Shown: positions 25,883-44,808, numbered from the stretch's first letter. The stretch: DNA of 64,000 nt from Schmidtea nova (GCA_044892505.1 CM097882.1:100254001-100318000), one strand, 5' to 3'. The notes: generated from the sequence alone by a model not told the origin. Made by a program: numbers and translations.

Positions 25883-28110
25883 AGTAGGTAGATGTGTGGA
25901 GTCAAACACAAAGAAATGAGTCATAATGCGTGGGCGGAAAATTTTAAACAAAGAACTTTTTTTTTCGGAACCCCCCCCGGGGGGGTCAATTTTTTTTTTT
26001 TTTTTTTTTTTCGCGCCAAAAATTTTTGAATTTTTTTTTTTGAAAATTTTTTTTTTCGCGCCAAATTTAAATTTGAAAATTTTTTAACACAAAATTTTTT
26101 AACACAAATTATTTTTTTTTTTAACACAAAATTTTTTAACACAAAATTTTTTAACACAAAATTTTTTAACACAAAATTTTTTAACACAAATTTTTTCAAC
26201 ACAAAATTTTTTAACACAAATTTTTTCAACACAAAATTTTTTAACACAAAATTTTTTTTTTTTTCACAAATTTTTTTTTTAAAAATTTTTTTTTTTTTTT
26301 AAACAAAGAACTTTTTTATGCGTGGGCGTTAAAAATTTAAACAAAGAACTTTTTAATGCGTGGGCGTAAAAAATTTTTAAACAAAGAACTTTTTCGAGGC
26401 CCCCCCGGGGGGGTCAATTTTTTTTTTTTTTTTTTTTCGCGCCAAAAATTTTTGAATTTTTTTTTTGAAAATTTTTTTTTTTCGCGCCAAATTTAAATTT
26501 GAAAAATTTTTAACACAAAATTTTTTAACACAAATTTTTTTTTTTTAACAAAATTTTTTAACACAAAATTTTTTAACACAAAATTTTTTAACACAAAATT
26601 TTTTAACACAAATTTTTTCAACACAAAATTTTTTAACACAAATTTTTTCAACACAAAATTTTTTAACACAAAATTTTTTAACACAAATTTTTTCAACACA
26701 AAATTTTTTAACACAAAATTTTTTAACACAAATTTTTTCAACACAAAATTTTTTAACACAAAATTTTTTTTTTTTTCACAAATTTTTTTTTTAAAAATTT
26801 TTTTTTTTTTTTAAACAAAGAACTTTTTTATGCGTGGGCGTTAAAAATTTAAACAAAGAACTTTTTAATGCGTGGGCGTAAAAAAATTTTTAAACAAAGA
26901 ACTTTTTCGAGGCCCCCCCGGGGGGGTCAATTTTTTTTTTTTTTTTTTTTTCGCGCCAAAAATTTTTGAATTTTTTTTTTGAAAATTTTTTTTTTTCGCG
27001 CCAAATTTAAATTTGAAAAATTTTTAACACAAAATTTTTTAACACAAATTTTTTTTTTTTAACACAAAATTTTTTAACACAAAATTTTTTAACACAAAAT
27101 TTTTTAACACAAAATTTTTTAACACAAATTTTTTCAACACAAAATTTTTTAACACAAAATTTTTTAACACAAATTTTTTCAACACAAAATTTTTTAACAC
27201 AAAATTTTTTAACACAAATTTTTTCAACACAAAATTTTTTAACACAAAATTTTTTTTTTTTTCACAAATTTTTTTTAAAAATTTTTTTTTTTTTTTAAAC
27301 AAAGAACTTTTTTATGCGTGGGCGTAAAAAATTTAAACAAAGAACTTTTTAATGCGTGGGCGTAAAAATTTTTAAACAAAGAACTTTTTCGAGACCCCCC
27401 CCCGGGGGGGGGCTAATTTTTTTTTTTTTTTTTTTTTTTCAAAAATTATTTTTTCGCGCCAAAAATTTTTAAAATTTTTAAAAATTTATTTTTTTTTCAA
27501 ATTTTTTTTTTCCCGCCAAATTTATTATTGTAAAATAATTTTTTTTTTTTACACAAATTTTTTACACAAATTTTTTAACATAAATAATTTTAACAGAAAT
27601 ATTAGTCATCGAAAAGTTTGCAACACGCGTGCAACTTAAACAAAGACAATGCAATACATGTGCAAGACTTTGCAACACGCGTGCAACTTAAACAAAGACA
27701 ATGCAATACACGTGCAACATGAACAAAGACATTGAAAATAAAATTTATTTATAAATATATCGTTGTGTACGTGTACAAAATTTAGTTTCAAAATTATTTA
27801 CATCTGGATTATTACTCGGAATATTATTATTCATAGGAATATTATTCATTGTAATATTATTCATCGGAATACTAGTATTTGTCGGAATATTATTCTTTGG
27901 AATATTTGAAATCTTCTCCAGCCGTATGGATGCCGATAACATCATTATAATTATTAATATAAATAAACTTATATAATGTAATACAATGGCTGTTTTTTCA
28001 TTTTCAACTGTTTGATTTTGGTATCTGACTTCATATTCTTTTTTAACAAAAGTTTGATTGATACATTTTAATCGTTCAACTATTTTCATCATTATTTTGG
28101 CAATCATTTT
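25883..28110 (+). repeat. Left TIR of the Polinton (2.23 kb, internal block present three times)
   Basis: Reverse complement of 43544-44808 except that the block of C/G palindrome, AACACAAAATTTTTT array and GCGTGGGCG units (about 430-510 bp) occurs three times. Confidence 0.92.
27745..28107 (-). CDS. TIR-borne copy of the C-terminal 120 aa of the membrane protein at 43325-43909
   Basis: Identical translation from MIAKIMM onward; the upstream frame stays open into an N-masked tract. Confidence 0.5.
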   Translation of the reverse strand: MIAKIMMKIVERLKCINQTFVKKEYEVRYQNQTVENEKTAIVLHYISLFILIIIMMLSASIRLEKISNIPKNNIPTNTSIPMNNITMNNIPMNNNIPSNNPDVNNFETKFCTRTQRYIYK

Positions 28111-28959
28111 AATAATATTANNNNNNNNNNNNNNNNNNNNNNNNNNNNNNNNNNNNNNNNNNNNNNNNNNNNNNNNNNNNNNNNNNNNNNNNNNNNNNNN
28201 NNNNNNNNNNNNNNNNNNNNNNNNNNNNNNNNNNNNNNNNNNNNNNNNNNNNNNNNNNNNNNNNNNNNNNNNNNNNNNNNNNNNNNNNNNNNNNNNNNNN
28301 NNNNNNNNNNNNNNNNNNNNNNNNNNNNNNNNNNNNNNNNNNNNNNNNNNNNNNNNNNNNNNNNNNATAATAACTTATAATNNNNNNNNNNNNNNNNNNN
28401 NNNNNNNNNNNNNNNNNNNNNNNNNNNNNNNNNNNNNNNNNNNNNNNNNNNNNNNNNNNNNNNNNNNNNNNNNNNNNNNNNNNNNNNNNNNNNNNNNNNN
28501 NNNNNNNNNNNNNNNNNNNNNNNNNNNNNNNNNNNNNNNNNNNNNNNNNNNNNNNNNNNNNNNNNNNNNNNNNNNNNNNNNNNNNNNNNNNNNNNNNNNN
28601 NNNNNNNNNNNNNNNNNNNNNNNNNNNNNNNNNNNNNNNNNNNNNNNNNNNNNNNNNNNNNNNNNNNNNNNNNNNNNNNNNNNNNNNNNNNNNNNNNNNN
28701 NNNNNNNNNNNNNNNNNNNNNNNNNNNNNNNNNNNNNNNNNNNNNNNNNNNNNNNNNNNNNNNNNNNNNNNNNNNNNNNNNNNNNNNNNNNNNNNNNNNN
28801 NNNTTATAATAATAATAATAACTTGTAATAAAAATATTCAACACATAAAAAATATTCAACACATTAAAAATATTGTCATAGTTTTTATTGATTGCGCAAT
28901 ATTATTAACAATCAAAAAATAAGGCCCTAAAGAGGACCATTATTTCATTCTCAATCTTT

Positions 28960-29400
28960 TTTCATATTTCTTTTCGGTTTTCATATTTCTTTTCGGTTTT
29001 CATATTTCTTTTCTGTTTATCTTTTCGGTTATCATATTTCTTTTCGGTTTTTCGTTTCGGTTTTCATATTTCTTTTTAGTTTTGATATTTCTTTTATGTA
29101 TGTTCTTTTCGGATTCTTTTCTGTTTTCATTTCAGTATTATTTTCTGTTTTCACAATCTGTTTTTCTGATTTCCTTTCTGTTTTCATAATAAATTTTAAC
29201 AATTGAATTTCCTTTCTGTTTTCTTAAATCTAAAATCTAAATTTTTAAAAACTGATTGTTACAATCAAAAATTGTGGCCCTGAAGAGGGCCGATTGTGCA
29301 TTCGCATATCTTTCTGGTTTTTTTTTTTGATTTTCTGTTTTTGGATTTTTTGATTTTTTTTTTTTTGATTTTCTCTTAATTTTTTTTTTCTTTCCATTTT
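28960..29400. repeat. Low-complexity 17-18 bp repeats (TCATATTTCTTTTCGGTT-like) downstream of pPolB
   Basis: Tandem degenerate copies visible from 28962. Confidence 0.7.
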
Positions 29401-29422
29401 CTTATAGATTTATATCTAGCCA

Positions 29423-29498
29423 TCATCGCAAATAATTATGCTCCGGCTCTTCGTAAAATAAATACGGATCATCTTGTAGCTGTTGTTGTAGCTGCTGC

Positions 29499-29532
<34 letters not shown>

Positions 29533-32500
29533 GCTGTTGTTCATTCTGAGGCTGCTCCGTATCTAAAATACTGTTACCCCCTCTATAATGGCCATATGCC
29601 AGGCTTTTATTTTTCCCTACCCAATTGCGCTTGTCATCTCTACAGCTTAATGCCCGCTTATTATTTTTCACACTAAAAAGCTGGTGATTTTTTGATGTTA
29701 TCCTAAACTGGGGGACCGTATAGATCTTATTATTTAAATAGCAATCGAGATACGACTGATGAGTTAGTCCAGTATCCTTCATGCATATCCCCTTAGCCTT
29801 CATACTTTCCTCATCACCCATTAAGCTGTAGCATTTCGGTCTAAGAAACACCCACTCTTTATACAACATCCCTTTACTCTCGTCTTTGAACTTTCCAATG
29901 ACAGAGTCAAGGTTTCTGTTGTATAAAGGATCCATAGGGTCATAATTAGAGGTGTCCAGCAAGCAATCATTAACCATAGCCGGTAAAAGAGTGTCAAGAC
30001 TACAGTTTTTGACCTCAAGAAAAAAGGAGTCAGTATCCCCAGCGACGATGTTAATCTTACAGTTGTAGTCGTCACGATATTTTTGTAACTCTACATACTG
30101 TAGCTGGTACATTCTTAGTTTGGATAAATCCAGTACAGTTTGACCGATGTAGCTGGGTCTATCCAAACATACTGACTCCTTTCGCAGCAAGACAGAAATA
30201 AGGTCATTATCGATTTTATTTGTTTTACGAAACGTAGGTTTCGAGCAATAAGTTATTAATTTTTCGGCATTATTACATAGTCGTAAATTAATACGTTTTT
30301 TTAAATTTTCAACAGTCTTGCCGTAAAGACTGTTGTTTAATAATTTATAAAAATCTCGATCTAATTTAGTTGTTGACGCCGATCGTAACGTCGTATTTGT
30401 GTTGATATAATTTAAAAAAATTTTATCTTGATTAAATTTTATGGCCCTGTGGACCTTTGTTATGACGATGCCTAATTTAAGAAATAGTTGCAGAAGCCGC
30501 CAATGAAGAACATAGTTCTTCTTTGGATTATGCGTGAGCATCAGCTTCTCAACCTTGGATCCCGGTGCACACATCTTTTCAGCGGCAACTGGAAGATCAT
30601 CCAGTTTGTCGTGAATTGATGCCGGTATCTCCAAATCCACTTCTATGGTGTAGCCATAATGAAGTGCATCTAGATCAACCGATGTGCACTGACAAACGAT
30701 TTCATTTAATAAGTGGTCATCTGTGACCCATTCAAAATTAGAACAAGGTAAAGGTTGGCTTAAGGCCCATCCATACAAGTTATTGATGTCTATGTAAAGC
30801 AATGAGGTATCCGGGCTTGTTTTTACATAGTGTTTGTTAATAAAAGTTAGTCCGCCACGGATACCGCCCTCGAAAAAATTGTACATTTCCATATCGGTGA
30901 GGAGCTCGATTGGAGATTCTAAGGTCATTAAGGCAGAACTCCAAGATAAACTTGGAATCCCGAGGAAATTCAGAGGTTCAAGTCTATTATGATTAATAGA
31001 CTTGAAACGAAATTGCTGGAAAAAATCAGCAAGTAAAAAAACGTCCAGTTTTAAATAAACCATCATGTAATCAAAAAGTGAATTACATGATGTTTCAATC
31101 CATATTCTTTGCGCCATTGCATATTCTTCTGGCTTTACATCTTTCCAGATCGGCGGGAGAGCTAAAGTAGAATGTAAAACTTCTAAGGAAGTTGCAGCAT
31201 CATAGGGAAAAATGCCCTTGGCTGTAATTATAGTGCCTTGAAATTCTGATTCGGTGAGTGGTAAGGAAGTAAGAGTTTTGACAGCATTATTTAAAGACTC
31301 GCTGACGAATTGGTATGAGTCTATGAATTTGACAGTTAAAGAGTCAATCCTAGCAAAAAGACTAAGAAATTTCTCACTTGTTAATGGAATACAGCTAATA
31401 TTCCATTTACGATATTTAGATAAACCATATTTTAGAATATGGTGTAGATCATACCCCTTTAAATTGTGAAAGATGACAGGAAGGGTATGTCTAATCTGCC
31501 TATTTTTATTACATTCTGAGCAAGCTGCTCCAAGAAAAAGACCGGTGAAATGGTCATGGTCCCTAACAGGTCGACATAATAGCTTTTTGCATAAATAACA
31601 AATTGTGCTGTTGTTAAATTCAATTTGTTGCTCATGGCTAATTATCATAGTTTTATTAGCGTTTTTATAATAGTACGGCGTTACTATGTGGCGACTTATA
31701 AGCTCTATTTCATTTAGAAAATCCTCTACACAATTAAGGCCTGCAAAAGATTTATAGGATTTTTGTCCAGTAAAGTTGTTAATTAATAACAAACCCGCAG
31801 AAATAGGCAAATGCTTTTGGAAATACCTGGTGTCCGCAGGTAAGATTGCCTCAAAGTCGGCATAAATAACAAAGGGAGGAGTCACTGTTTTGCGCCATTC
31901 AGTAAATTCCAGCATCTTATTTTTTGGTAAAGTGTACAAAGTTGTACCAGTTTGATTCTTATCACAAAGACCCCTATGCCTATTGAAAACCTCATCATTT
32001 CGAAAACCATTTAAGCACCTCGGACACCATTTACTACAAATCCTTACCGAAGTTATCGCGCTATTACGGCAATTCAAAAAACGATTCAAATCAAAGATGC
32101 CTATATAATGAAAAGTTTTTCTGTTTTGAAGTAATAACAGATTTATTGGGGTACCACCTACAACTTTTGACTTGTAAATTAAGTCAATAAAAGGATGTTT
32201 AAGGACAATATCCTCATTTTCATCAATAAGATCTAATAAGGGATTTTCATCATATGACAAAACATTGACGCTATAACCTGGGTTTTGTCTCTCAAATTTA
32301 CTTATATTACCAAGTCTCATAGGCATATCATTGGGGTCATAATTCAATTGTGAAAGATTATAAGAGGAAGGAATGCAACGAGTTTCATTTGTTAAACTGT
32401 CATATTTAATTATAGAAAGGAAACTATATAAAAAACAAAAGTTGTCCTGATTTACCACATTAACTAAACATTTCTTTTTCCTTAAAGATTTCGGAGTTTC

Positions 32501-34787
32501 GATAAACTGACTTCCGCTTAATCGAGTTATTTCAGAGTATCTGGTCAAGACAAAGCTAATGTATTCAACTTTTGAGATAGTCCAGTTACTACCTTTCTCA
32601 TTTATCGCGATGATTTTTTCATTTAAAAGAGCAATACCTTCCTCAATGAAGGTATCACTCCAGACCCTGGCAGAATTTGAGATAACGAACGATTGTAATT
32701 CATCGTCCTTCTCAAATTCCACCTTCAAACAGAATTGAATTTTAACAGTTTTATATTTGTTAACTTGAAAAGTTAATTTTTCTAAAAGAATTGTCGGTAC
32801 TGAGACCGTTTTCAAATTAAGATTTTCCACGTCCATTTTAACAATTATATGATTGTTATTTAGGTCATTGACGATTTCGACGGCACCATATCCGATTTGG
32901 TTATTATTTAAATTATTTAAATTATTTACATTATTATTTAAATTTTCATCATCACTGATGACTATTAATTCATCATCAGTGAGATCTATTATTTGAATTT
33001 TAGTAGGAACTGAATCCGGAATTTTAATATGTTTTCGTTTATTATTTGTATTATTTATATTATTGATATTATTTGTATTATTTATATTATTTGTTTGATT
33101 ATTATTTGTATTATTTATAGTATTATTTAGATTATTTGTATTATTTATAGTATTATTTAGATTATTGTTATTTATATTATTATTATTTATAGTATTATTT
33201 ATAGTATTATTTATAGGATTATTAATAAAATTAGGAAAAAGTTCCTTAAATAAAATTTTCTTAGACGGTTGAAACTGTGAAAGATGGCTACAGTGCCTAT
33301 TAAAGAAGTCTATATATGGGCAAATTTCGATAAGTTTACAGGTGGGGCATATGAGGTGGGTAACAGTATTATATGGCAACGAGTAGTATTTTTCCATAAT
33401 GATATGACAATCATTATGGAACCTACTGTTGCAAAAATTTTTGTAGGTTGAACCTGAATTTTAAAATAAAAAAATAATTAAATAAATTATCAATATAAAT
33501 AATGAAAATAAAAAATAATATAAAGTAAAATGGATATTTCATAATATAATTATATAACATAAATATCTTTATTGAAAAATCAAAATTTCATAATATAATT
33601 CTATTTCCTAAATGTTTTTATTGAAATATCAATATTTCATAATATAATTCTATTTCCTAAATGTTTTTATTGAAATATCAATATTTCATAATATAATGAT
33701 ATAACATAAATATTTTTTATTGAAAAGTAAAATAGACATTTCATAATATAATTCTATAAGATAAATGTTTTTTATTGAAAAGTAAAATGGATATTTCCTA
33801 ATATAATGGTATAAGATAAATGTTTTTTATTGAAAAGTAAAATGGATATTTCCTAATATAATGTTATAACATAAATGTTTTTTAGTGAAAATGGATATTT
33901 CATAATAAAATTCTAGTACATAAATGTCTTTTAACAAAAATTATAATTCATATTTCATAATATAATGCTATAACATAAATACTTTTTATTGAAAATGGAT
34001 ATTTCATAATATAATGGTATAACATAAATGTCTTTTAACAAAAATTATAATTCATATTTCATAATATAATGCTATAACATAAATACTTTTAATATTATAC
34101 TTTTAAATAATTTAGTAATTGTTTTTATAAACCATTACTAAATTATTTAAAAATAATATATTAAAAGTATTATTTATATTAAAAAGTTAAATTAAAAAAG
34201 TTAAATTATAAATCAATAATGATTAATACATACATTTGTTCTTCCCATAAATTGGGGCATCCAGATTAATAGGAGCATTTCTCGGGACGTCAGCAACTTT
34301 CGGGACGTCAGCAACTTTCGGGACATCATCATGATTCGGGACCTCATCGTCCATATCGACATTTCTCATAATATTCATATTATCTGAAACATTTATAATG
34401 AAATAATATTAATAAAATAAATAAATAAATTACAATTAGATCGTCCCATTGACGAAAATCCACCCATCCTTGATGTTGATGCTTCGGCATTGTTGTTGTT
34501 GTAGTTGTTACTATTATTAACTAAAGTAATAGTAAAATAATAATAAAAAATAATAATAAATATTACCCAAAAATCTAATCCCATTATTCTCATTAATACG
34601 AATCCTTGGAGCAACATTCATATCTATCGATTGATCGTCTTGTCCCATCATAACATGAGCGATATTTCGCGCTATATTCATTTCTGAAATAATAATAATA
34701 ATAATAAAAAATAAAAATAAAAATAATAAATTTACCATTTACACCTCCTGCGAGATGTCTTTCCTTTACGATTCGGATATTGTTCAT
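29423..34787 (-). CDS. polB: Protein-primed family B DNA polymerase with terminal-protein region; predicted five exons, 1478 aa (the single ORF 29423-33397 gives 1324 aa)
   Basis: Exo II FHNLKGYD, motif A YIDINNLYG, motif B KLLNNSLYGK, motif C GDTDS, HDHFTG..CN zinc insert, poly-Q tail. Predicted exons 34787-34736, 34683-34567, 34520-34434, 34383-34234 and 33453-29423 join in frame at GT-AG sites. The polymerase call is firm; the 5' exons are a prediction. Confidence 0.9.
33525..34110. repeat. Degenerate minisatellite of about 55-60 bp inside the predicted fourth polB intron
   Basis: About ten copies of ATATTTCATAATATAAT..TATAACATAAATG..TTTATTGAAAA. Confidence 0.85.
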
Positions 34788-34854
34788 AATTGTTTGATAT
34801 TAATTTAAAATTGATTTAAAAAATTTGTAAGTAAAAAGTGACGAAATAATGCAA

Positions 34855-35060
34855 GTATATACTATATAAAGATGAATTTTATTAACCGACCAATCAGAAT
34901 CGAGATAGGATAGGCAAATACATGCACACATACTGCACACACAATGTACCTTTGTTTATGTGTGTTTGACGTCACGATATTGCTTTGTATCGTGACAAAG
35001 ACATGATATGACGTGTTTCATCATGTGCTTATCACGCACTGATCACGCACTGGTCATGTC
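34855..35060 (-). promoter_or_regulatory. Predicted promoter of the spliced polB gene
   Basis: TATA-like 34855-34870, CCAAT box 34890-34894, CRE TGACGTCA 34967-34974, ACAAAGACA 34995-35003. Confidence 0.55.
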
Positions 35061-35148: not shown

Positions 35149-35550
35149 TTATTGCTTTAAATAATCTACAACAGCAGACAAGCACCCTTTATAGGCACAC
35201 ATACAATGGTCTTTATAGGGACATGAAATGTTTTCAGGAACATATTCAACTTCTTTATAAGTATATTTGATTAATCTTAATTTCGGGAAATACTTCTTCA
35301 AAACATACATCTTTTCATTATCGGTAACATAGAAAATAGCTCCTTTATCTGTGATATCATCCATTATACATTTTGGGCAAAAATAATCTTGTCCTTCAAA
35401 CGATTCTATACGATCAGGCCATAAAGATAAATCACTGTATATATAATACTGGGGTGTGAAAATATTATTAACATTCATAATACATAATTCCTTAATTGTT
35501 GTTCCACCCATTTCATTATAACCATAAAAATCGATAAAATAACAAGACAT
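35149..35550 (-). CDS. 133-aa protein resembling small DEDD/DnaQ exonuclease-like Polinton ORFs (probably non-catalytic)
   Basis: YFIDFYGY...IKELCI N-terminus, FYVTDNEK..LKKY and a C-terminal Cys/His cluster CPYKDHCMCA; recognised from memory of motifs only. Confidence 0.5.
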   Translation of the reverse strand: MSCYFIDFYGYNEMGGTTIKELCIMNVNNIFTPQYYIYSDLSLWPDRIESFEGQDYFCPKCIMDDITDKGAIFYVTDNEKMYVLKKYFPKLRLIKYTYKEVEYVPENISCPYKDHCMCAYKGCLSAVVDYLKQ

Positions 35551-35582: not shown

Positions 35583-35960
35583 TTATAACATTGATTTTAA
35601 CCATGCAAGGCAATGTTCACCACAAGTGATTGTTAAAGGATGCTGATATCGAATTCTATTATACACAATAGGTTTACCAATAGTTTGAAGTTTTCGAACA
35701 AGTAAATTCGGATAATAATATCCAAAGGGATCAAATACATGTATTCGATCTGGTTTCACATAAACTGCAATCCAATGTTCACCGCCCAACGTAGATGTCT
35801 GAGTATTTACAATGATGGCTTGATTCATTTTCAAATAAGGTATTTTATCCAGAGGAAATACTCCAATAAATTGATTTCCCAATAGTTTTTTACCTTGATG
35901 TCATACCTGAATAGAACTAATTAAAAATAAATAACTAATCAAATAAAAATCTTACTCCAT
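35583..35960 (-). CDS. Adenain-like cysteine protease (49-nt intron 35907-35955; one-base frame discrepancy at 35886-35891)
   Basis: Catalytic His (GEHWIAVY), Asp (FDPFG), Gln and Cys (YQHPLTITCGEHC); ATGGA|GTAAG...TTCAG junction. Confidence 0.9.
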
Positions 35961-36034
35961 GATGATAATAATAATAATAATAATAATAACTTTGGTCATT
36001 TATACTGTTTAAACCAATAATGTTTGAGCTCTGC

Positions 36035-37255
36035 TCAAACTAATATTGTTCGATTGGCAGTAATTTGTACTTCATTTTCAAAAACTCCATATATAATTAC
36101 ATGAACCGGTTCATCAATGGGTTTTGCAAACTTTATATCGAGTCGTAAATTCCCGTTTTGAGGGATTTGGCTTTGATTCAAATCGAAATCGGGAGCGAGC
36201 ACAAATGTAAAGAATGGATATTTACTTTTAAATTCATCCAGACTTATACCACAATTCAAGTTTTTATCCAAATATCCTAGATTTCGGACAAGACTTTGCA
36301 TATATGTGGCACTAAAATTATCATTTTCAAAATCTTGAGTATAAGTTTCTCGAAAATCGGTATTTTTCGATAACGATAATGAAGTCACATTGAAATGTTT
36401 GAATGTAGATGCAGATTCAGCATATGATCCATTATATTGATTTTCAGTTTGAAAAGCCACAAGAATGAAATTAGGCATTCTTCTATCTCCAAATATTTGC
36501 TCCTTGTAAAATGACGATGCCCCTTTACCGATTGCAAACGATACGATTTCTTTAGATTTTAATGGATAAATTGCATGTTTACTATTTAAACCAATTTGAT
36601 GACCGGCCAAAACTGAAGATTCACATCGAACTCTTCTTACCATTAATTTTGCATCAACTATTTGGATTATAGGTTTCCCAGCTGCAGATTTCAATGATAA
36701 TGAAGATTCAGATCTCTTCAATCTAATATGTACATTAACTCCGGGAAGTAAGTATTTTGGTTGATCCATAAAATCGAGTTGTAATGATGAACACATGTTG
36801 AAAAGTTTAGATCCCTTGATCCATTTTTTCCGATCGTCAGATGAACCATATCCCATTGGAGTAAGACATGTTTCTTTTGTATCGCTAGTATAATTTAAAA
36901 CAGTTTCGATTATGGCCTTGTGTGCATATGTATTGTTTCCACCCTCGATTTTTATATTATTAAATCCAAGAATCGCATCTTTGAAAAGAGTATGAAATAG
37001 GTAATTATTAGGCACTACATCACTCGCATCAACTAATTTATTTTTATCTTTATCTAGAACCTTGACAGTAACGAATAATAAAGTATCGTTCAAATCCAAA
37101 TATTCGGTTGCCGATCCATTAATGTAAAATTCAACATTATTTCTACTATCTGTAATAGAATTCATTGGAAAAACATCTTCAAACACCCCATATTCAATAA
37201 CTGCTTGAGGTGATGGTCGATCAAAAAGACATAATTCAGATTTACCGCAAATCAT
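36035..37255 (-). CDS. Double jelly-roll major capsid protein (hexon-like), 406 aa
   Basis: CGKSELCLF..P.Q N-terminus, EYLDLNDTLLFV, NNYLFHTLFKD, KYLLPGVNVHIRL, GNLRLDIKF, typical of Polinton major capsids. Confidence 0.9.
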   Translation of the reverse strand: MICGKSELCLFDRPSPQAVIEYGVFEDVFPMNSITDSRNNVEFYINGSATEYLDLNDTLLFVTVKVLDKDKNKLVDASDVVPNNYLFHTLFKDAILGFNNIKIEGGNNTYAHKAIIETVLNYTSDTKETCLTPMGYGSSDDRKKWIKGSKLFNMCSSLQLDFMDQPKYLLPGVNVHIRLKRSESSLSLKSAAGKPIIQIVDAKLMVRRVRCESSVLAGHQIGLNSKHAIYPLKSKEIVSFAIGKGASSFYKEQIFGDRRMPNFILVAFQTENQYNGSYAESASTFKHFNVTSLSLSKNTDFRETYTQDFENDNFSATYMQSLVRNLGYLDKNLNCGISLDEFKSKYPFFTFVLAPDFDLNQSQIPQNGNLRLDIKFAKPIDEPVHVIIYGVFENEVQITANRTILV

Positions 37256-37617
37256 TCTTCAAATATAGTTCCATGACCTTTCATTCGTTTGTTTATACGT
37301 TTTCTAATCTTTTTACGTCTTGGTCCTACCGGTTCAGGTTGCGGTTCGTTTTTGGAAAACATATTTGAAATTGACGGTATCGCCTTGGATACAGCCTCCA
37401 TAGCATTCGTTTTCAATGTAGGCAAAATTTTCTGATCTTTCATTATAACGTCTTTAGCAGTTTTCATTCCAAAACTGCCCAGTCGCTTAAGTAGTGGAAG
37501 TGCAAATCTTCCAATAGTTTTCAACCAACCTGATCCATACTGTTTACCTATAAAATACGGTAATTCGCCACCAGTTTGGCTATTACTGTACAATGAAATT
37601 ATATCGGGATTACTCAT
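37252..37617 (-). CDS. Small virion core / membrane-active precursor protein, 121 aa
   Basis: QTGG and QYGSG protease-site motifs followed by an amphipathic helix WLKTIGRFALPLLKRLG; basic C-terminus; ATGA overlap with the capsid gene. Confidence 0.75.
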   Translation of the reverse strand: MSNPDIISLYSNSQTGGELPYFIGKQYGSGWLKTIGRFALPLLKRLGSFGMKTAKDVIMKDQKILPTLKTNAMEAVSKAIPSISNMFSKNEPQPEPVGPRRKKIRKRINKRMKGHGTIFEE

Positions 37618-38662
37618 GATGTTTTCGAAAATGTAGAGTCAAATGAGTTTTTGAATTTTTTGGAAAGTTTATTAAATTACCTCTATCATCTCGGATATTT
37701 ATTTCTATATTGTTTATACAGGATGTTGAAACAGATAAATACATTGGATTTTCAACTTGTATTTGAACAACCTCATCCTGTTCATATTTTTCAATCCATA
37801 CAGATTTCAACATGGGAACTAATGAATCACCGACAATTATAGGATTGACTATATTACTGTAAATGAACATTTGCTGATGAAGTTTAATTATTTTTGGTTT
37901 ATATATTCCAACAGTGAAGCTTCCGTCTTGAGCATATGTAGCTTTCGCTAATCCCAATGTTTTTACAAGGTTATTGTCAAAAGTTATTTCGCTAACATCT
38001 GCATTCAAACTGAATTTGAAGTAACTATCATCTACCAATTCCAGAGATTTAAAAATACTTGCACAATTTAGAATAAAATATGATTGCAATTCATCCAGTT
38101 TCGATATGTATAAATTATCGGTAAATGTATGTATAAATGCAGAATCAGCCTTGTACTCCATCTTTATTCTAATTTTTTCCGTTAATGGACCATCTATACC
38201 ATAATATGGTAACGGTATCTTGTATGTATCTGTAGGACTTACAATACTCTGTTTCGTTAATCCCATTCTTTTTGCCATTGCCAAAGTATCAAAAGTTATA
38301 GTGAAGGGAAAATTATCACAGGTAAAATAAATAGAATGTCTATCGCTACTGATTTGAGCAATATCATCGGCAGGATTAGATATATCAACTTCACAAAATT
38401 GATTGTTGATAATCAAATTTTTATATTTTGTATGTAAAGTTTTCTTTTTGTACCGAATTTCTGATTTACTGTAAAATGGAAATGGATTATACACAAATGT
38501 AAAGTCTAAGAGAGCGACTTCCCAAATCCCGTCCAAATACATTGGATTTTGGAGATTGACCATGAAATTACTGGAAGTATTATCTGGATGTATATCTGGA
38601 CAACTGTTGCTAGGTAGAATCATATAAAAATTCATTTTACTAGGTTTTTTGATGATATCCAT
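37610..38662 (-). CDS. Minor capsid protein (penton-like); likely start at Met10 (38635)
   Basis: FYMILPSNS..HPDNTSSNF..L..P..L.G.WEVAL N-terminus and MFIYSNIV.P.IVGD..VPML C-terminus, typical of Polinton minor capsids. Confidence 0.88.
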   Translation of the reverse strand: MDIIKKPSKMNFYMILPSNSCPDIHPDNTSSNFMVNLQNPMYLDGIWEVALLDFTFVYNPFPFYSKSEIRYKKKTLHTKYKNLIINNQFCEVDISNPADDIAQISSDRHSIYFTCDNFPFTITFDTLAMAKRMGLTKQSIVSPTDTYKIPLPYYGIDGPLTEKIRIKMEYKADSAFIHTFTDNLYISKLDELQSYFILNCASIFKSLELVDDSYFKFSLNADVSEITFDNNLVKTLGLAKATYAQDGSFTVGIYKPKIIKLHQQMFIYSNIVNPIIVGDSLVPMLKSVWIEKYEQDEVVQIQVENPMYLSVSTSCINNIEINIRDDRGNLINFPKNSKTHLTLHFRKHHE

Positions 38663-39678
38663 GATGGTTCTTTATATCCATGCCACTTTACATAGTATTG
38701 TTTATCCTTACCCACCATTTTAGATTTCAGGATTTTTTGAATTCTAAATATTGTCGGTGGAGGAATAACTTGTAATTCTTGTTCGTAGAATTTCCCACTG
38801 ATTATATTGTTATCAGAGTCACAAATAGTATACATGACAGGATTCTGCACTGTGTTGACTTTCGATATTTGATATACCTCATCACTCCAATTATTATCAA
38901 AATTTTTAATGAATGGCGATGCACTAATCTTGCTAATTCGAACATGATCACCAATTTTATATTTTGGTTTCTTTACTTTTACTTCACTCACAATATTTTC
39001 AGTATCAACTACTTCTGCCGGTTTCCTGTCATTTATACCCCGATGAGCACTATGATTATAACTATGAATCAATTGAGGTAAAACATTAATCCAGGTTTTA
39101 TTGCCTTTAAAAACAAAGTATTTTTTCAATCGATCACGCAAAGTTCGATTAAATCTCTCGACATGAGCGGCTTTGAATTGCGAGAATACCGAATAATGAT
39201 TTATTCCCTTGATAACTTCCTTGACTTTACTGTTGTAAAATTCCTTTCCTAAAAAATATTAAAAATGTATAAATTTAAATTAAAATTTACCCAAATCGGT
39301 TTGTAAATTAGTTGGCCGATCCTTTTTCATCATTGTCTTGATAGCGATTGCCATGTCATTAGCTGATTTCGATTTTACTCCAATTGCTCGAGCAAATCTA
39401 CTGTAAACATCAATACATGTTAAAATATACTTGTACCCCTTGTTAATAGCGGAATACGGAATCATTTCCATCAAATCCATTTGCCACAAATCATTGATTC
39501 TATATGTTTTATATGCTCGAGTTGGAAACCGTTTCAACATCGGTTTGTTTAGACTGTATGCAAGTTGCCCCGATAACCAACTTTGTGTCTGTTGTTTCGA
39601 CTTCTGTGCTTTTTTCCTTAGCTTTTCGACTCCACCGAAACCGGCGTCGTCTTTTGGGTTCGTCCAGATCTTCTCCAT
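38632..39678 (-). CDS. int: Retroviral-like (rve) integrase with C-terminal chromodomain, two exons, 334 aa
   Basis: WQMDL, spliced LQTDLG|KEFYN, AAHVERFNRTLR, chromodomain IQKIL..YYVKWHGY; exons 39678-39291 and 39248-38632 total 1005 nt. Confidence 0.92.
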
Positions 39679-39733
39679 TACAACAAGAAGATTTAAAGTT
39701 TAAATTTAAATTAGGTAATGATTGACCCATTGT

Positions 39734-40279
39734 TTATGACCTTTGTCCCAATAAACCAGCACCTCCCAATAATGATAAAGCTAGTGGTAATAATGCGGCA
39801 ATAAATCCTCCTTGTTGTTTATATATTATTTTTCGCATAAGTTTTCGATTTTTTGTTTTTACTAGCGACAACAATGGTTTCTTATGCTTGTTCAAAACAC
39901 GTCGATTAGATGGACTGAGATGCATTTTACCTCGTACTACTTTAATTAAAATAGTGAGTAAATCATCGATAACGTAATTAGGAAACGATTGAAGAATACC
40001 CATTCTTCTAGCGGATGGGGCTTTAAGCAATGCATTAAAAAACGGAAAACTCCGATGATGTACTTGTTTAGCATTTGATTTCAAATTAATTGGAATTTGA
40101 TTTTGTTTGGGAAAATTATCCATAATTAGTTTTTTCGATGGTGTATAACTTGTTTTTGAAACTGATTTTGAAACGGATTTCTTTGTCGATTTCTTTCTTC
40201 GACCTGCTTTCTTACCTATTTTCATTGATTTTCGAGCTTTTATCAATCGTTCAAACTTTACTCGAGATTTCATTAACAT
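39734..40279 (-). CDS. Basic core protein with adenovirus pX-like C-terminus, 181 aa
   Basis: K/R/S-rich N-terminus; QQGG|FIAALLPLALSLLGG resembles the pX MRGG|ILPLLIPLI motif. Confidence 0.75.
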   Translation of the reverse strand: MLMKSRVKFERLIKARKSMKIGKKAGRRKKSTKKSVSKSVSKTSYTPSKKLIMDNFPKQNQIPINLKSNAKQVHHRSFPFFNALLKAPSARRMGILQSFPNYVIDDLLTILIKVVRGKMHLSPSNRRVLNKHKKPLLSLVKTKNRKLMRKIIYKQQGGFIAALLPLALSLLGGAGLLGQRS

Positions 40280-40299
40280 TATTATTACTGTAAATCAAT

Positions 40300-40923
40300 T
40301 TAACTTTGTTTATAAACCATGGCTCCTTCCTTGTTAAAAATATCAGTTCTAACCCTTAAATCATCACTGCATTGTTGAGTAAAATCCAAGAAAATATATC
40401 CATGAGGAGATTTTGTAGCATCCTGAAAGGCTTCAATCAAAAAGTTACGATTTGAAGGATAAGCTTGTCTTGCCAGAAAATCAATAACTGTTGCATCTCT
40501 AGGATTTTTAAAAACAACAAGATATTGAACATTTAAATTACGAGTTCGATGACTACCGCCCTGATGAAATAAATTCTGAGTTATAAAAATAACAGTAACA
40601 CCTTTATGTCTACTGATTTTCGTAAATAAATTATTAAAATCCTTTTCTTTATTTGCTTCTTGATACAAATCGTCAATGATAATCACATCACCTTGTTTTA
40701 ATCTAGATGACCAGTTTTTATCGAAACCTTTTATGATTGTCATTTTTATTTTACAAAACTGATCTTGTGTCATTCCACTTTCGTCGTCAGCACCCCTATG
40801 CCAATAAATATTATTAAATTTCGACTTGAATAATTTCGATTGCAATAATTTACAAACAAATAAAGTTTTTCCACTCCCGCTCGGACCAACAATTTGAAAC
40901 ACTGCATCATTTCTTAATTCCAT
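40300..40923 (-). CDS. A32/FtsK-like genome packaging ATPase, 207 aa
   Basis: Walker A GPSGSGKT, Walker B IIIDD, ISRH and ITQ motifs. Confidence 0.93.
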   Translation of the reverse strand: MELRNDAVFQIVGPSGSGKTLFVCKLLQSKLFKSKFNNIYWHRGADDESGMTQDQFCKIKMTIIKGFDKNWSSRLKQGDVIIIDDLYQEANKEKDFNNLFTKISRHKGVTVIFITQNLFHQGGSHRTRNLNVQYLVVFKNPRDATVIDFLARQAYPSNRNFLIEAFQDATKSPHGYIFLDFTQQCSDDLRVRTDIFNKEGAMVYKQS

Positions 40924-41016
40924 ATTTAAAATTTATATTTTCTTAATATTATTGATTATATTTGTTTTAAATACATGTTCTCAAAGTAATTATTTCATTT
41001 AAAAATATTTTCAGTA

Positions 41017-41484
41017 ATGATTAGAAACATTAATTACAAGGGTAAGACAGATGTATCACACATGAAATTTCCAAAAGGTAAACCCCAGCAAATTGTAGAT
41101 CGAACTGGAAAATATCCCATAATATACTTTAAAACAGGAAGATATAGAATAATGGGATGCAGGGAATTTATTAGTGAGGAACAAGTTGAGTTTTACGATT
41201 TAAAGATACAATCGATAACTGTAACTGCGGATTTAGGATTTATTTGTAATTTGAATGAATTATCTAAATTGATACCGTGTGTTTACGAGCCAGAATTATT
41301 TCCAGCTTTGAGGTATACCAAATATAATCCCATGTGTGTAAACATATTTCCAAGTGGGAAATTAGTCATATTAGGATTAAAAAACAAAGACTATAGTACT
41401 ATAGTTGATGATATTATTTACGATATAAAATCAATTATAGAAGATAAAGCCTTTGTTGATTTCATACTAACATGTGACTCATGA
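41017..41484 (+). CDS. TATA-binding-protein-like protein, 155 aa
   Basis: YEPELFPALRY and NIFPSGKLVILG match TBP repeat 2 (YEPELFPGLIY, LIFVSGKIVLTG); IRNINYKG..IYFKTGRYRIMG matches repeat 1. Confidence 0.82.
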   Translation: MIRNINYKGKTDVSHMKFPKGKPQQIVDRTGKYPIIYFKTGRYRIMGCREFISEEQVEFYDLKIQSITVTADLGFICNLNELSKLIPCVYEPELFPALRYTKYNPMCVNIFPSGKLVILGLKNKDYSTIVDDIIYDIKSIIEDKAFVDFILTCDS

Positions 41485-41509
41485 CTGCAATATCGATGCA
41501 TTAGAAATG

Positions 41510-41625
41510 CACGATTCTGATTGGCTCTGTGTGTATCGATAGAATAAAGACATGTTGTGCATGCTTCATTCTGATTGGTTCATTGTGTGTGTTTGAAATC
41601 ATGTGTGTTTCTTTGATATATATAC
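41510..41625 (+). promoter_or_regulatory. Predicted promoter: two inverted CCAAT boxes and TATA
   Basis: CTGATTGG ending at 41524 and 41578; TATATATA 41617-41624; CGATTCTGATTGG is shared exactly with the polB promoter. Confidence 0.55.
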
Positions 41626-41659
41626 TATGAACAATCTCACATAGTTTATATTCACAATT

Positions 41660-42295
41660 ATGTATCTTACGCAAACTTTAATTAAAAGCCGTAAGGGTTT
41701 TAATTTTTAATTTTTCATATTTAATATTATTTTAGAAAAACTAATGAACGTTATCTATCGAAAGCTGGAGGAGCTATTCCCGAACCTGATGCCGGCTCTC
41801 GTCTACACGGCTCCGGAGATGTTCCCATATAAAATTATGGTCCTGACTGGTATCGATATAAACCAGATTGTGCTCGACCACATGACGAGCCAGAATACAG
41901 ATCTCCCAATGGTACCCGAACACATTATGTGCGCATATCAATGCGGAAGTTGTGTTGAAAGAATACGACAATTCAACATCTGGGTTTTGCGAAACTCGTT
42001 GAAATTATTCGATGTCCAGCAAATGGATAAAATCGATGAGGAGGAAGAAGAGCAAATCAAGGAAACCTGGCCCAACTCTACTCCGGAGCCGATTGATGCC
42101 GATGATCAATCAAAAAATGATTGCTCAATGGAACATGCACCATCTCTAGATGGCCCGTATCCATCGGAATCACCTGATTGTTCAGAATCTCCACAATCAC
42201 CTGATTGTGCAGAATGCCATCGACAGGCTGATGGTGTTGAAGAAGAGGAGGAAGAAGAAGAAGAAGAAAAAGAAAAAGAAAACGACGAACAATAA
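41660..42295 (+). CDS. Hypothetical protein with CxxC and acidic tail; two exons (45-nt intron 41691-41735)
   Basis: ATG at 41660, donor C|GTAAGG and acceptor TTTAG|AA join in frame to ORF 41744-42295; poly-Glu C-terminus; a homologous relic at 49170-49400. Confidence 0.7.
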
Positions 42296-42841
42296 TTTGA
42301 TTTGCATGTTTAATGTATTTAGTTTTTTTTTATTCTTTTAGTTATGTCATTTTTGTTATTTTAGTATAATAAAAGATTTTTAATTATTTTAGTTTTTTAT
42401 TCATTTTAGTTTTTGTTTTCATTTATTTAAATAATAGTAATAGTTTTTTTTTTATTAAAACATTTTTAATAGTAGTAATTTTTATTAACTAAATATATAT
42501 CAAGTTAATAGTTTTTTATTAAATACTAATTAATATGAAAGTGTTTTATGAAAGATAATAATTTGTGAAATAAATAAATAAATAAATAAATAACAACATT
42601 AGTAGCAGAACATTGTGATCAGAACCCTGGAAGCAGAATCTCTTCTGTGATGGTTTTGATATACAAAAAACTTCATACTAAACATATACTAAATAATTTA
42701 ACATGCACGCATACAACAAAGACATTGCAATACATGTGCATAGTGTGTGCAAAACGAATGCATGAATATGATTGGACAAAGACATCTAGTCATCAGTATA
42801 AATACAAAGACATTTTATAAAATATTGTCACAATTTATAAA

Positions 42842-43258
42842 ATGAATTCAAGAAAACAAAATTTAGATATAAGCGAAGAAAAAATATATCAGACTGAGGT
42901 AAAACCAGTCCAGATGTACTACGACAGCCGACTTTATTTTTTGGTTAATGAAATACCGTATCGATTATCATTTCCGGTAAAGTTAACAAAATCTTTATAT
43001 GACAGTCTTGCTGTAATTATTGCCAAGGAAGATATTATCGCATTAAATAGATTATTTTCAAAGATGAATGTTAATTTGACATGTAAAGAAACCATGTACA
43101 TCAATAACAGAAAAACTCGGTTTCATGATGCGTTTCAAACAATTGATTTCATGGATCAAGAACATTGGTTCGTTACCGTTATTATTCAAGGGTACAAGAT
43201 TGATAAAAAAGATGTTGTTACTCCAATTTGGAGAGTTGACAATGCAAGATATGCATAA
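42842..43258 (+). CDS. Hypothetical 138-aa protein, possibly an OB-fold ssDNA-binding protein
   Basis: Intact ORF with CCAAT and TATA upstream; beta-strand-like C-terminus VTVIIQGYKIDKKDVVTPIWRV. The function is a guess. Confidence 0.6.
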   Translation: MNSRKQNLDISEEKIYQTEVKPVQMYYDSRLYFLVNEIPYRLSFPVKLTKSLYDSLAVIIAKEDIIALNRLFSKMNVNLTCKETMYINNRKTRFHDAFQTIDFMDQEHWFVTVIIQGYKIDKKDVVTPIWRVDNARYA

Positions 43259-43324
43259 TTGTTTTTTAATAAATATTTTTTAGTATGAACAATTTTAGTT
43301 TTGATATTAGTTTTTGTTTTTAAA

Positions 43325-43909
43325 ATGAAATTAATTATAGTTATTTTATTATTATGTGTTCACAATACTGAAGGAGAACAAGCTTTGGAAGATTGTCAAT
43401 CATCCCATCCGTTTCGAAAACAAGATAGTACTTGTGCGAGTTATAATGATATATGTCTTTACTCAAACCTTGAATGCAGTCAAATAAAATTACAATGTAA
43501 TCAATGTCCTTCCAAAAATAATGTGATTAATAATGACATTGAAAAAATGATTGCCAAAATAATGATGAAAATAGTTGAACGATTAAAATGTATCAATCAA
43601 ACTTTTGTTAAAAAAGAATATGAAGTCAGATACCAAAATCAAACAGTTGAAAATGAAAAAACAGCCATTGTATTACATTATATAAGTTTATTTATATTAA
43701 TAATTATAATGATGTTATCGGCATCCATACGGCTGGAGAAGATTTCAAATATTCCAAAGAATAATATTCCGACAAATACTAGTATTCCGATGAATAATAT
43801 TACAATGAATAATATTCCTATGAATAATAATATTCCGAGTAATAATCCAGATGTAAATAATTTTGAAACTAAATTTTGTACACGTACACAACGATATATT
43901 TATAAATAA
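43325..43909 (+). CDS. Predicted type I membrane protein (signal peptide, six-Cys ectodomain, TM, NNIPM-repeat tail)
   Basis: MKLIIVILLLCVHNTEG signal-like start, Cys-rich segment, TM AIVLHYISLFILIIIMMLSASI. Confidence 0.72.
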   Translation: MKLIIVILLLCVHNTEGEQALEDCQSSHPFRKQDSTCASYNDICLYSNLECSQIKLQCNQCPSKNNVINNDIEKMIAKIMMKIVERLKCINQTFVKKEYEVRYQNQTVENEKTAIVLHYISLFILIIIMMLSASIRLEKISNIPKNNIPTNTSIPMNNITMNNIPMNNNIPSNNPDVNNFETKFCTRTQRYIYK

Positions 43910-44808
43910 ATTTTATTTTCAATGTCTTTGTTCATGTTGCACGTGTATTGCATTGTCTTTGTTTAAGTTGCACGCGTGTTGCAAAGTCTTGCACATGTAT
44001 TGCATTGTCTTTGTTTAAGTTGCACGCGTGTTGCAAACTTTTCGATGACTAATATTTCTGTTAAAATTATTTATGTTAAAAAATTTGTGTAAAAAATTTG
44101 TGTAAAAAAAAAAAATTATTTTACAATAATAAATTTGGCGGGAAAAAAAAATTTGAAAAAAAAATAAATTTTTAAAAATTTTAAAAATTTTTGGCGCGAA
44201 AAAATAATTTTTGAAAAAAAAAAAAAAAAAAAAAAATTAGCCCCCCCCGGGGGAGGGGGTCTCGAAAAAGTTCTTTGTTTAAAAATTTTTTACGCCCACG
44301 CATTAAAAAGTTCTTTGTTTAAAAAAAAAAAAAAATTTTTTAAAAAAAATTTGTGAAAAAAAAAAAAATTTTGTGTTAAAAAATTTTGTGTTGAAAAAAT
44401 TTGTGTTAAAAAATTTTGTGTTAAAAAATTTTGTGTTGAAAAAATTTGTGTTAAAAAATTTTGTGTTAAAAAATTTTGTGTTGAAAAAATTTGTGTTAAA
44501 AAATTTTGTGTTGAAAAAATTTGTGTTAAAAAATTTTGTGTTAAAAAATATTGTGTTAAAAAATTTTGTGTTAAAAAAAAAAAAATTTGTGTTAAAAAAT
44601 TTTGTGTTAAAAAATTTTCAAATTTAAATTTGGCGCGAAAAAAAAAATTTTCAAAAAAAAAAATTCAAAAATTTTTGGCGCGAAAAAAAAAAAAAAAAAA
44701 TTGACCCCCCCCCCGGGGGGGTTCCGAAAAAAAAGTTCTTTGTTTAAAATTTTCCGCCCACGCATTATGACTCATTTCTTTGTGTTTGACTCCACACATC
44801 TACCTACT
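43544..44808 (-). repeat. Right TIR of the Polinton (1,265 bp)
   Basis: Reverse complement of the left end; inner boundary lies inside the membrane-protein gene. Confidence 0.92.

What the first reader, a model, noticed from the sequence alone, without database searches (positions are those of the whole stretch)
25883..44808. Complete, young and potentially inducible endogenous adintovirus
Seen: perfect TSD, near-identical TIR sequence, and open frames for polymerase, both capsids, ATPase, integrase and core proteins; the only lesion noticed is one base in the protease. Established: this gene set defines Polinton/adintovirus elements, and virions have rarely been shown. The accessory set (TBP-like, membrane protein, acidic CxxC protein) is not part of the standard core.
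Basis: partly seen in the sequence, partly recalled or inferred. Interest (0 to 1): 0.82.

Follow-up and report, generated by a model that had tools for sequence, protein, structure and literature searches.

The report
Recently integrated Polinton/Maverick provirus, nearly complete
This is a real, very recently inserted virus-like giant transposon (a Polinton/Maverick, also called an adintovirus) in an AT-rich, animal-like genome; its gene set is almost whole, but it belongs to a well-known kind, and nothing here shows it is complete or can be switched on.

Summary
The observation mostly holds. An 18,926-nt element (25883-44808) is bounded by a perfect 6-nt target-site duplication (TTTGTG) and terminal inverted repeats. 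The tips match perfectly for 82 nt, and the unique inner 547 nt of the repeats are 100% identical.

It encodes:
- a protein-primed polymerase B (PF03175, 4.5e-30);
- a double-jelly-roll major capsid protein and a penton, both confirmed by fold search;
- an A32-like packaging ATPase;
- an rve integrase with a chromodomain;
- an adenain-like protease;
- a one-repeat TBP-like protein and several small unassigned proteins.

- The integrase is two ORF pieces, separated by a likely 42-nt intron.
- The protease has one frameshift; its 3' end is natural.
- The left repeat arm carries about 1 kb of extra tandem copies.
- About 0.67 kb of N lies 10 nt inside the left repeat, so "complete" cannot be certified.

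The element sits inside an older, degraded relative. This shows the scaffold join is sound, and it places the element in transposon-rich, probably silenced DNA. "Inducible" has no support either way.

Verdict: a new member of a known kind, of moderate interest.

The parts
25877..25882 (.). Left copy of the 6-nt target-site duplication (TTTGTG)
25883..28110 (.). Left terminal inverted repeat. It holds three tandem copies of the ~500-nt subterminal block and many 15-nt repeats. Its inner 547 nt are identical to the right arm.
27745..28107 (-). Mirrored copy of the last 120 codons of o202, inside the left repeat (120 of 120 residues identical)
28121..28803 (.). Assembly gap (246 N, 15 read letters, 422 N). 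It starts 10 nt inside the inner end of the left repeat. Its content is unknown and was not filled.
28804..29422 (.). AT-rich stretch downstream of pPolB with 19-nt tandem repeats and short lysine-rich ORFs. No assigned gene; one could run into the gap.
29423..33397 (-). Protein-primed DNA polymerase B, 1324 aa, one open frame. It has an N-terminal domain with an invariant Cys and His, an Endo VII/HNH-like zinc module between Exo I and Exo II, and poly-N and poly-Q tracts.
33522..34084 (.). Tandem array of a 55-nt unit (about 10.8 copies) upstream of pPolB; possibly regulatory (inference)
34223..34787 (-). Candidate small multi-exon gene, judged by eye: coding-like blocks separated by short AT-rich GT..AG stretches. 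A TGACGTCA palindrome and a TATA-like motif lie upstream. Untested.
35149..35550 (-). o133, a 133-aa cysteine-rich protein with no family match
35583..35960 (-). Adenain-like cysteine protease. The catalytic core is one 99-aa ORF. One frameshift separates it from the short initiator-bearing 5' end. The 3' end is natural for this short family.
36035..37255 (-). Major capsid protein (double jelly roll), 406 aa, open
37252..37617 (-). o121, a small basic protein between penton and MCP, at the position of PW in vertebrate Mavericks
37610..38662 (-). Penton (single jelly roll with an insertion domain), 350 aa, open
38632..39678 (-). rve-family integrase with a C-terminal chromodomain. It is two ORF pieces in one phase, separated by a likely 42-nt intron.
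39734..40279 (-). o181, a very basic protein (24% K+R) with a hydrophobic Gly/Ala/Leu-rich C-terminal tail; candidate core protein (inference)
40300..40923 (-). A32/FtsK-like packaging ATPase, 207 aa, open
41017..41484 (+). TBP-like protein, 155 aa, with one full TBP repeat at residues 57-139
41744..42295 (+). o183, an acidic protein (24% D+E) with two CxxC motifs and no family match
42842..43258 (+). o138, a 138-aa protein with no family match
43301..43909 (+). o202, a predicted type I membrane protein: N-terminal hydrophobic leader, cysteine-rich part, one membrane span. Its 3' part lies inside the right repeat.
43544..44808 (.). Right terminal inverted repeat (1265 nt)
44809..44814 (.). Right copy of the target-site duplication (TTTGTG)
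23641..24893 (-). Left part of an older, degraded relative that the young element inserted into: protease-like, MCP-like and o181-like remnants
45084..49055 (.). Right part of the same older relative: ATPase-like remnant (45084-45400, minus strand) and TBP-like remnant (48798-49055, plus strand)

Best explanation
This is a chromosomal copy of a Polinton/Maverick (polintovirus, adintovirus-type) element that integrated very recently.

Shown: it carries the two modules that define the class.
- Replication and integration module: a protein-primed family B polymerase, and an rve integrase with a chromodomain.
- Adenovirus/virophage-like capsid-building module: a double-jelly-roll capsid protein, a penton, an A32-like packaging ATPase and an adenain-like maturation protease.
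- Structure: long terminal inverted repeats and a 6-nt target-site duplication.

Inferred from established knowledge of the class:
- The integrase made the staggered cut that gave the duplication. Its chromodomain steered it to repeat-rich chromatin, here an older copy of its own family.
- The polymerase would copy a linear form from the repeat ends by protein priming.
- The capsid module could package that DNA.
- The tight, overlapping run of genes from the ATPase to the MCP on the minus strand, and the accessory genes on the plus strand, diverge from a 93-nt spacer. Some genes contain short introns, so expression depends on host RNA polymerase II and splicing.
- The one-repeat TBP-like protein is most likely a transcription accessory factor of this lineage.

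Whether this copy is competent is unknown. It has one protease frameshift, an unread 0.67 kb and unequal repeat arms.
For: - Bounds, TSD and repeats.
- pPolB: PF03175 at 4.5e-30 when the domain is scanned alone. There are 1142 relatives, the best 58% identical. 15 of 25 aligned sequences hit PF03175. All Exo and Pol motif residues that are invariant across the 25-sequence alignment are present.
- MCP: model pLDDT 89.8. Foldseek gives E 2e-16 to 1e-11 against iridovirus, PBCV-1, Sputnik and mavirus capsid proteins. The best viral-library match is a protein of Cotesia sesamiae bracovirus, at 24% identity and E 3e-26; bracovirus segments are known to carry Mavericks.
- Penton: pLDDT 88. It matches the mavirus penton at 1e-7, and also Sputnik and adenovirus penton bases.
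- ATPase: Pox_A32 at 29.8 bits, above the 22.8 cut-off.
- Integrase: rve at 34.5 bits, above the 32.6 cut-off; Chromo at 25.5 bits.
- Protease: Peptidase_C5 at 27.3 bits, above the 21.3 cut-off. There are 2300 relatives, the best 74% identical.
- Gene order: INT-penton-small protein-MCP-PRO equals the second module of vertebrate Mavericks (PMC8097293).
- Youth: 0 mismatches in 547 nt of unique repeat and a perfect TSD, against 41-73% amino-acid identity to the nested-into relic.
- One locus: the relic's gene order continues across the insertion.
Against: - About 0.67 kb is unread.
- The protease has one frameshift. It may be an assembly error: in the first 195 columns from the tips the repeat arms differ by only 1 substitution and 7 gap columns, in homopolymer runs.
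- The left arm has extra tandem blocks.
- The OTU domain expected in adintovirus polymerases was not detected by Pfam or PDB sequence search.
- No PLA2X, gasdermin-type or fusogen gene was found.
- The intron in the integrase rests on sequence features and profile continuity only. No transcript was seen, and no relative's DNA was compared.
- The host is only inferred to be an animal, from a rhodopsin-type receptor gene in the flank.
Confidence: 0.85

Rival explanations
1. The sequence is a composite. In a draft short-read scaffold, several near-identical copies of a multi-copy family may have been collapsed. The open frames and identical repeats would then describe the family's majority read-out, not this locus, which may be more damaged.
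For: There are eight N runs in 64 kb. A gap lies right at the inner edge of the left repeat. The left arm has an odd triplicated block. In the first 195 columns from the tips the arms differ almost only by gaps, in homopolymer runs.
Against: The TSD and the relic's collinear gene order tie both ends to one insertion. No second copy or fragment of the young element occurs elsewhere in the window.
Confidence: 0.2
2. The element is young but already dead and silenced. The protease frameshift would be real, the element fixed, and it would lie in heterochromatin, so it would be a fresh fossil rather than a latent virus.
For: There is one frameshift in the protease. The element is nested in an older copy, among a Ty3/gypsy ORF, a MULE ORF and RT remnants. 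The integrase has a chromodomain.
Against: All other hallmark genes are open and keep the residues that are invariant in their families. A one-base frameshift in this assembly cannot be told from an error.
Confidence: 0.4
3. The element is not integrated. It would be an exogenous virus genome or a contaminant, wrongly scaffolded into a host contig.
For: Relatives of its MCP and pPolB appear to sit together on element-sized contigs of 14-22 kb in metagenome and read-archive assemblies. This is inferred from matching contig lengths.
Against: Both tips are read straight into flanking DNA with a matching 6-nt duplication. The two flanks are halves of one older element.
Confidence: 0.03

Closest known systems
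Intact Mavericks/Polintons of vertebrates (Barreat & Katzourakis 2021, PMC8097293)
   Same: Same class-defining set: pPolB, ATPase, integrase, minor and major capsid proteins, and protease, plus two small conserved proteins, with TIRs and a 6-nt TSD. Same INT-mCP-PW-MCP-PRO order. Size (18.9 kb) and right-arm TIR length (1.27 kb) fall within the reported ranges of 12.7-24.6 kb and 46-1447 bp. The tip AGTAGG...CCTACT is close to the common (AGT)2//(ACT)2 motif.
   Different: The host genome is very AT-rich and not obviously vertebrate. At least one gene seems to have a short intron, whereas vertebrate intact copies are described as intronless. The left TIR is 2.2 kb, with tandem block copies. 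The accessory genes include a TBP-like protein. Part of one gene lies inside the TIR.
Adintoviruses, sensu Starrett et al. 2021 (PMC8502044)
   Same: A pfam03175-type ('Alpha') PolB, adenain, rve integrase, FtsK/A32-type ATPase, hexon-like and penton-like proteins, and an animal-like host context. A basic protein with a hydrophobic tail recalls the pX-like domains they describe (resemblance only).
   Different: The OTU domain was not detected by sequence; only an invariant Cys/His pair was seen. No PLA2X, gasderminX, cupiennin, Bcl2 or IAP homologue was found. In the viral fold library the MCP matches a protein labelled 'Penton capsid protein [Adintovirus sp.]' only at rank 21, with 10% identity. 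[quoted passage not shown]
Maverick carried in a Cotesia bracovirus segment (best viral-library match of the MCP)
   Same: It is the closest named capsid relative: 24% identity, Foldseek E 3e-26. That such segments hold Mavericks is in the literature (one search lists papers).
   Different: It is only a distant relative. The unnamed relatives in metagenome and read-archive assemblies are far closer (MCP up to 82%).
Nematode Polintons with pPolB2 carrying an HNH domain (Jeong et al. 2023, bioRxiv 10.1101/2023.08.22.554363)
   Same: A nuclease-type zinc module sits inside the polymerase. Here it is Endo VII/HNH-like and lies between Exo I and Exo II; 23 of 25 aligned sequences match it.
   Different: The class of this polymerase (pPolB1 or pPolB2) was not tested. 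No fusogen gene is present. The module scores below Pfam's own cut-off in the window's protein (20.3-20.9 bits against 23.6).
Mavirus and other virophages; Polinton-like viruses
   Same: Same capsid module folds: MCP, penton, ATPase and cysteine protease. Mavirus also has an rve integrase and a pPolB.
   Different: There is no sign of dependence on a giant virus. The host context is animal-like. Sequence similarity to the solved structures is low (8-13% identity in fold matches).

Membership tests
Polinton/Maverick (polintovirus) | [quoted passage not shown] | tested here: met
   PF03175 at 4.5e-30 and 105 bits on the polymerase domain alone. Exo I-III and Pol A-C residues are kept.
Polinton/Maverick (polintovirus) | Retrovirus-like (rve) integrase | tested here: met
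   rve at 34.5 bits against a cut-off of 32.6, plus a chromodomain. The gene is in two ORF pieces with a likely intron.
Polinton/Maverick (polintovirus) | Double-jelly-roll major capsid protein and single-jelly-roll penton | tested here: met
   Confident models (pLDDT 89.8 and 88.0). Fold matches to virophage, NCLDV and adenovirus capsid and penton proteins.
Polinton/Maverick (polintovirus) | A32/FtsK-type packaging ATPase and adenain-like cysteine protease | tested here: met
   Pox_A32 at 29.8 bits. Peptidase_C5 at 27.3 bits. The protease gene has one frameshift.
Polinton/Maverick (polintovirus) | Terminal inverted repeats and a 6-nt target-site duplication | tested here: met
'Intact' Maverick, sensu Barreat & Katzourakis 2021 | All core ORFs open, with TIRs and TSD | tested here: inconclusive
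   All are open except the protease (one frameshift) and the integrase (split by a likely intron). 0.67 kb is unread.
Adintoviridae, sensu Starrett et al. 2021 | OTU-like domain at the N-terminus of PolB | tested here: inconclusive
   No Pfam or PDB sequence hit for residues 290-480. A Cys and a His are invariant in 25 of 25 aligned sequences.
Adintoviridae, sensu Starrett et al. 2021 | Animal host | tested here: inconclusive
   The flank holds an intronless rhodopsin-family receptor ORF (7tm_1 at 2e-23). No host marker that names a taxon was found.
Adintoviridae, sensu Starrett et al. 2021 | Lineage-typical membrane-active accessory gene (PLA2X or gasderminX) | tested here: not met
   No Pfam or PHROGs match in any small protein. 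One could be hidden in the gap or be too diverged to detect.
Adintoviridae, sensu Starrett et al. 2021 | PolB and virion proteins cluster with the Alpha or Beta reference viruses | not tested
Only indirect evidence is available: a pfam03175-type PolB and a distant fold hit to 'Adintovirus sp.'.
TATA-box-binding protein family | Two tandem TBP repeats forming the saddle | tested here: not met
   There is only one full repeat (residues 57-139). It aligns to either repeat of archaeal and eukaryotic TBPs. It is TBP-like, not a canonical TBP.

The most novel reading that the evidence does not exclude
This Polinton lineage may carry its own transcription-initiation factor. The one-repeat TBP-like protein is kept in both the young copy and the old relic (40% identity). 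It could act as a dimer on the element's AT-rich promoters, giving the element partial control over its own expression. The copy itself could also still be an active virus of its host.
Probability: 0.15. Interest if true: 0.6.

Novelty: new member of a known kind. Interest (0 to 1): 0.35.

Why it matters
Near-intact, freshly inserted Polintons are the best natural material for asking whether these elements still live as viruses in animals. This copy offers a clean case for purely descriptive follow-up: insertion polymorphism, transcripts and chromatin state. It has identical repeats, a perfect duplication and an "empty site" that can be recognised as an older relic.

It also records three lesser-known traits: a one-repeat TBP-like accessory gene shared by two generations of the family, a nuclease-like zinc module inside the polymerase, and short introns in element genes. 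None of these changes what is known about the class.

Tried and rejected
- The whole-length pPolB gave no polymerase hit in Pfam or PDB. Scanning the domain apart from the low-complexity ends solved this.
- OTU domain: Pfam and PDB sequence searches of the N-terminal domain found nothing.
- PHROGs found nothing for the six small unassigned proteins or the TBP-like protein.
- A k-mer search for a shared promoter motif upstream of the 14 genes found nothing beyond chance.
- LxCxE ("oncoid") motifs: one in o138 and one in pPolB, which is about what chance gives.
- Rfam and tRNA scans of the window were empty.
- Inverted-repeat continuation beyond the gap: none. 28804-29430 has no mirror on the right side, and the last 10 nt before the gap already diverge.
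- A 3' truncation of the protease was considered and rejected: close relatives are 105-126 aa long and end 3-7 residues after the window's ORF.

Steps left out on purpose:
- I did not fetch the DNA of related contigs from viral, metagenome or encoding-contig look-ups, because the relatives may be animal viruses.
They were scanned exon by exon by reference.

- I recalled from memory a stretch of an adenovirus core protein while thinking about the tail of o181.
- I worked out where the protease frame changes while reading.


Full report
GAP FIRST. The window has eight N runs. Two lie in the finding: 28121-28366 and 28382-28803, with 15 read letters between them.
- The left terminal repeat matches the right arm up to 28110. 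The last 10 letters before the gap no longer match. So the repeat ends naturally at 28110/43544, and the gap starts 10 nt further in.
- Nothing with homology support reads across it. The two roughly 250-aa "ORFs" listed there are strings of X.
- The ORF at 27745-28107 is the mirrored last 120 codons of o202, and lies wholly inside the repeat.
- On the other side, 28804-29422 is AT-rich and tandem-repetitive, with only short lysine-rich ORFs. A small gene could run into the gap.
- Continuity in sequence cannot be shown, but continuity of the locus can (see the section on context below).

BOUNDS AND AGE.
- The element runs from 25883 to 44808 (18,926 nt, counting about 668 N). Its tips are AGTAGG.../...CCTACT. 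TTTGTG flanks it on both sides.
- From the tips, 82 nt are identical. In the first 195 columns there is 1 substitution and 7 gap columns; by eye the gaps fall in homopolymer runs.
- In the 747-nt inner block, all 28 mismatches fall in the first 200 nt, which are low-complexity repeats. The remaining 547 nt are identical.
- The left arm is about 1 kb longer, because the roughly 500-nt subterminal block is present three times. This may be real or an assembly effect.
- Identical unique repeat sequence, a perfect duplication and open genes together mean a very recent insertion.

GENES.
- Polymerase (29423-33397, minus strand). It is one 1324-aa frame. Scanned whole, it misses the polymerase family because of its poly-N and poly-Q ends. 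Scanned as a domain, it hits PF03175 at 4.5e-30. It has 1142 relatives; the best is 58% identical and many carry PF03175 and PF02945. All Exo I-III and Pol A-C residues that are invariant across the 25-sequence alignment are kept. So are an invariant Cys and His in the N-terminal domain, and a CxxC...H.H...CxxC module between Exo I and Exo II.
- Major capsid protein (36035-37255). It has more than 150 relatives of 402-426 aa, up to 82% identical. The model has pLDDT 89.8. It is a double jelly roll, matching iridovirus, PBCV-1, Sputnik and mavirus capsids at E 2e-16 to 1e-11.
- Penton (37610-38662). It has 63 relatives and a model pLDDT of 88. It matches the mavirus, Sputnik and adenovirus pentons.
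- ATPase (40300-40923). Pox_A32 scores above the cut-off, and a Walker A motif is visible.
- Integrase (38632-39678). It is two ORF pieces in the same phase. The first piece covers rve profile positions 3-75. The second carries an rve_3 tail and a chromodomain. Between them lies a 42-nt stretch that starts with GT, ends with AG and is about 7% G+C. The residues on either side read on as the usual core motif. I take it for an intron. No tool predicted it, and no relative's DNA was compared. I scanned the exons apart and left the joined search out.
- Protease (35583-35960). The core is a 99-aa ORF with the adenain family match and the His, Asp, Gln and Cys visible. Among 2300 relatives, the close ones are only 105-126 aa long. 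They end 3-7 residues after the window's ORF and have about 13-16 residues before it. The 3' end is therefore natural. The residues just upstream in the same phase still match the relatives. The initiator-bearing 5' end is in another phase, so there is one frameshift and no other break. In this assembly a one-base frameshift cannot be told from an error.
- Small proteins. o121 and o181 are basic (18% and 24% K+R). o181 has a hydrophobic tail and a remnant homologue in the relic. Their role as core proteins is inference from position and composition.
- Accessory genes on the plus strand.
  - The TBP-like protein scores 6.7e-14 against Pfam TBP, and 1e-17 against an archaeal TBP. It has one repeat only, which aligns to either repeat of real TBPs.
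  - o183 is acidic, with two CxxC motifs.
  - o138 has no match.
  - o202 has a hydrophobic leader and one membrane span, and partly lies in the repeat.
- Other features, judged by eye: a 55-nt tandem array of about 10.8 copies upstream of the polymerase, and a candidate multi-exon small gene at 34223-34787.

CONTEXT.
- The flanks hold remnants of an older relative, in the family's own gene order. The protease-like, MCP-like and o181-like remnants lie on the left. The ATPase-like and TBP-like remnants lie on the right. They are 41-73% identical in protein to the young copy and only short ORFs are left.
- The young element therefore inserted between o181 and the ATPase of an old copy. This ties the two ends to one locus and validates the scaffold join.
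- The wider window holds a Ty3/gypsy pol ORF, a MULE ORF and an RT fragment, as well as a rhodopsin-type receptor ORF. This suggests an animal-like, transposon-rich region, as expected for an integrase with a chromodomain (inference).

COMPARISON.
- The gene set, the INT-penton-small protein-MCP-PRO order, the size, the right-arm repeat length, the 6-nt duplication and the tip motif match Mavericks as described for vertebrates. 134 intact copies are known there (PMC8097293).
- Against the adintovirus definition (PMC8502044), the pfam03175-type PolB, adenain, rve, FtsK-type ATPase, hexon-like and penton-like proteins are met. The OTU domain is undecided. The typical PLA2X or gasdermin genes were not found.
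- A nuclease domain inside a Polinton polymerase is described for the pPolB2 of nematodes and oomycetes.
- From my own knowledge, current taxonomy places animal Polintons in the family Adintoviridae. The label is therefore reasonable in the broad sense.

VERDICT. This is a real, very young and nearly complete endogenous Polinton/Maverick, a new member of a known kind.
- "Complete" is unproven.
- "Inducible" is untested, and the context argues for silencing if anything.
- I did not fetch the DNA of relatives, because of the bar on animal-virus sequences.
- MCP and pPolB relatives appear to share contigs of 14-22 kb, judged from equal contig lengths. This fits element-sized relatives elsewhere, but it is an inference.

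Noticed in passing
window 23641-24893 and 45084-49055: An older, degraded relative of the same element family lies in both flanks, collinear with the family's gene order. The young element is nested in it, between the o181-like and ATPase-like remnants.
   Followed up: yes
window 57753-61754: A Ty3/gypsy-type pol ORF of 1275 aa (protease, RT, RNase H, integrase), on the minus strand at 57892-61719. It is flanked by 131-nt, 100% identical direct repeats at 57753-57883 and 61624-61754, so it is possibly another young insertion.
   Followed up: partly
window 12471-13733, 14512-16380, 3843-4787: An intronless rhodopsin-family receptor ORF (420 aa), a MULE transposase ORF (622 aa) and reverse-transcriptase fragments. 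The first is the only host-like gene seen and the basis for calling the host animal-like.
   Followed up: partly
window 31500-31620 (pPolB residues about 592-631): An Endo VII/HNH-like zinc module sits between Exo I and Exo II of the polymerase, and 23 of 25 aligned sequences match it. A paper calls an HNH domain in pPolB2 a synapomorphy of oomycete and nematode Polintons. The many metagenomic relatives that carry it may widen that picture.
   Followed up: partly
window 34860-35060: Upstream of the candidate small multi-exon gene lie a TGACGTCA palindrome (CRE/ATF-like), repeated GTGCGTGAT motifs and a TATATA motif. Seen by eye only.
   Followed up: no
window 33522-34084: A tandem array of a 55-nt unit (about 10.8 copies, 79% matches) lies between the polymerase start and the small gene. 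Its function is unknown.
   Followed up: no
proteins P0010/P0185, P0023/P0198, P0026/P0195, P0045/P0216, P0047/P0212, P0078/P0214: MCP and pPolB relatives report the same longest-contig lengths (14.3-22.1 kb). They therefore probably sit on the same element-sized contigs in public assemblies.
   Followed up: no
window 8390-19415: Six further N runs of 132-399 nt lie in the left flank. The assembly is a draft scaffold, which tempers any claim about single-base lesions.
   Followed up: partly
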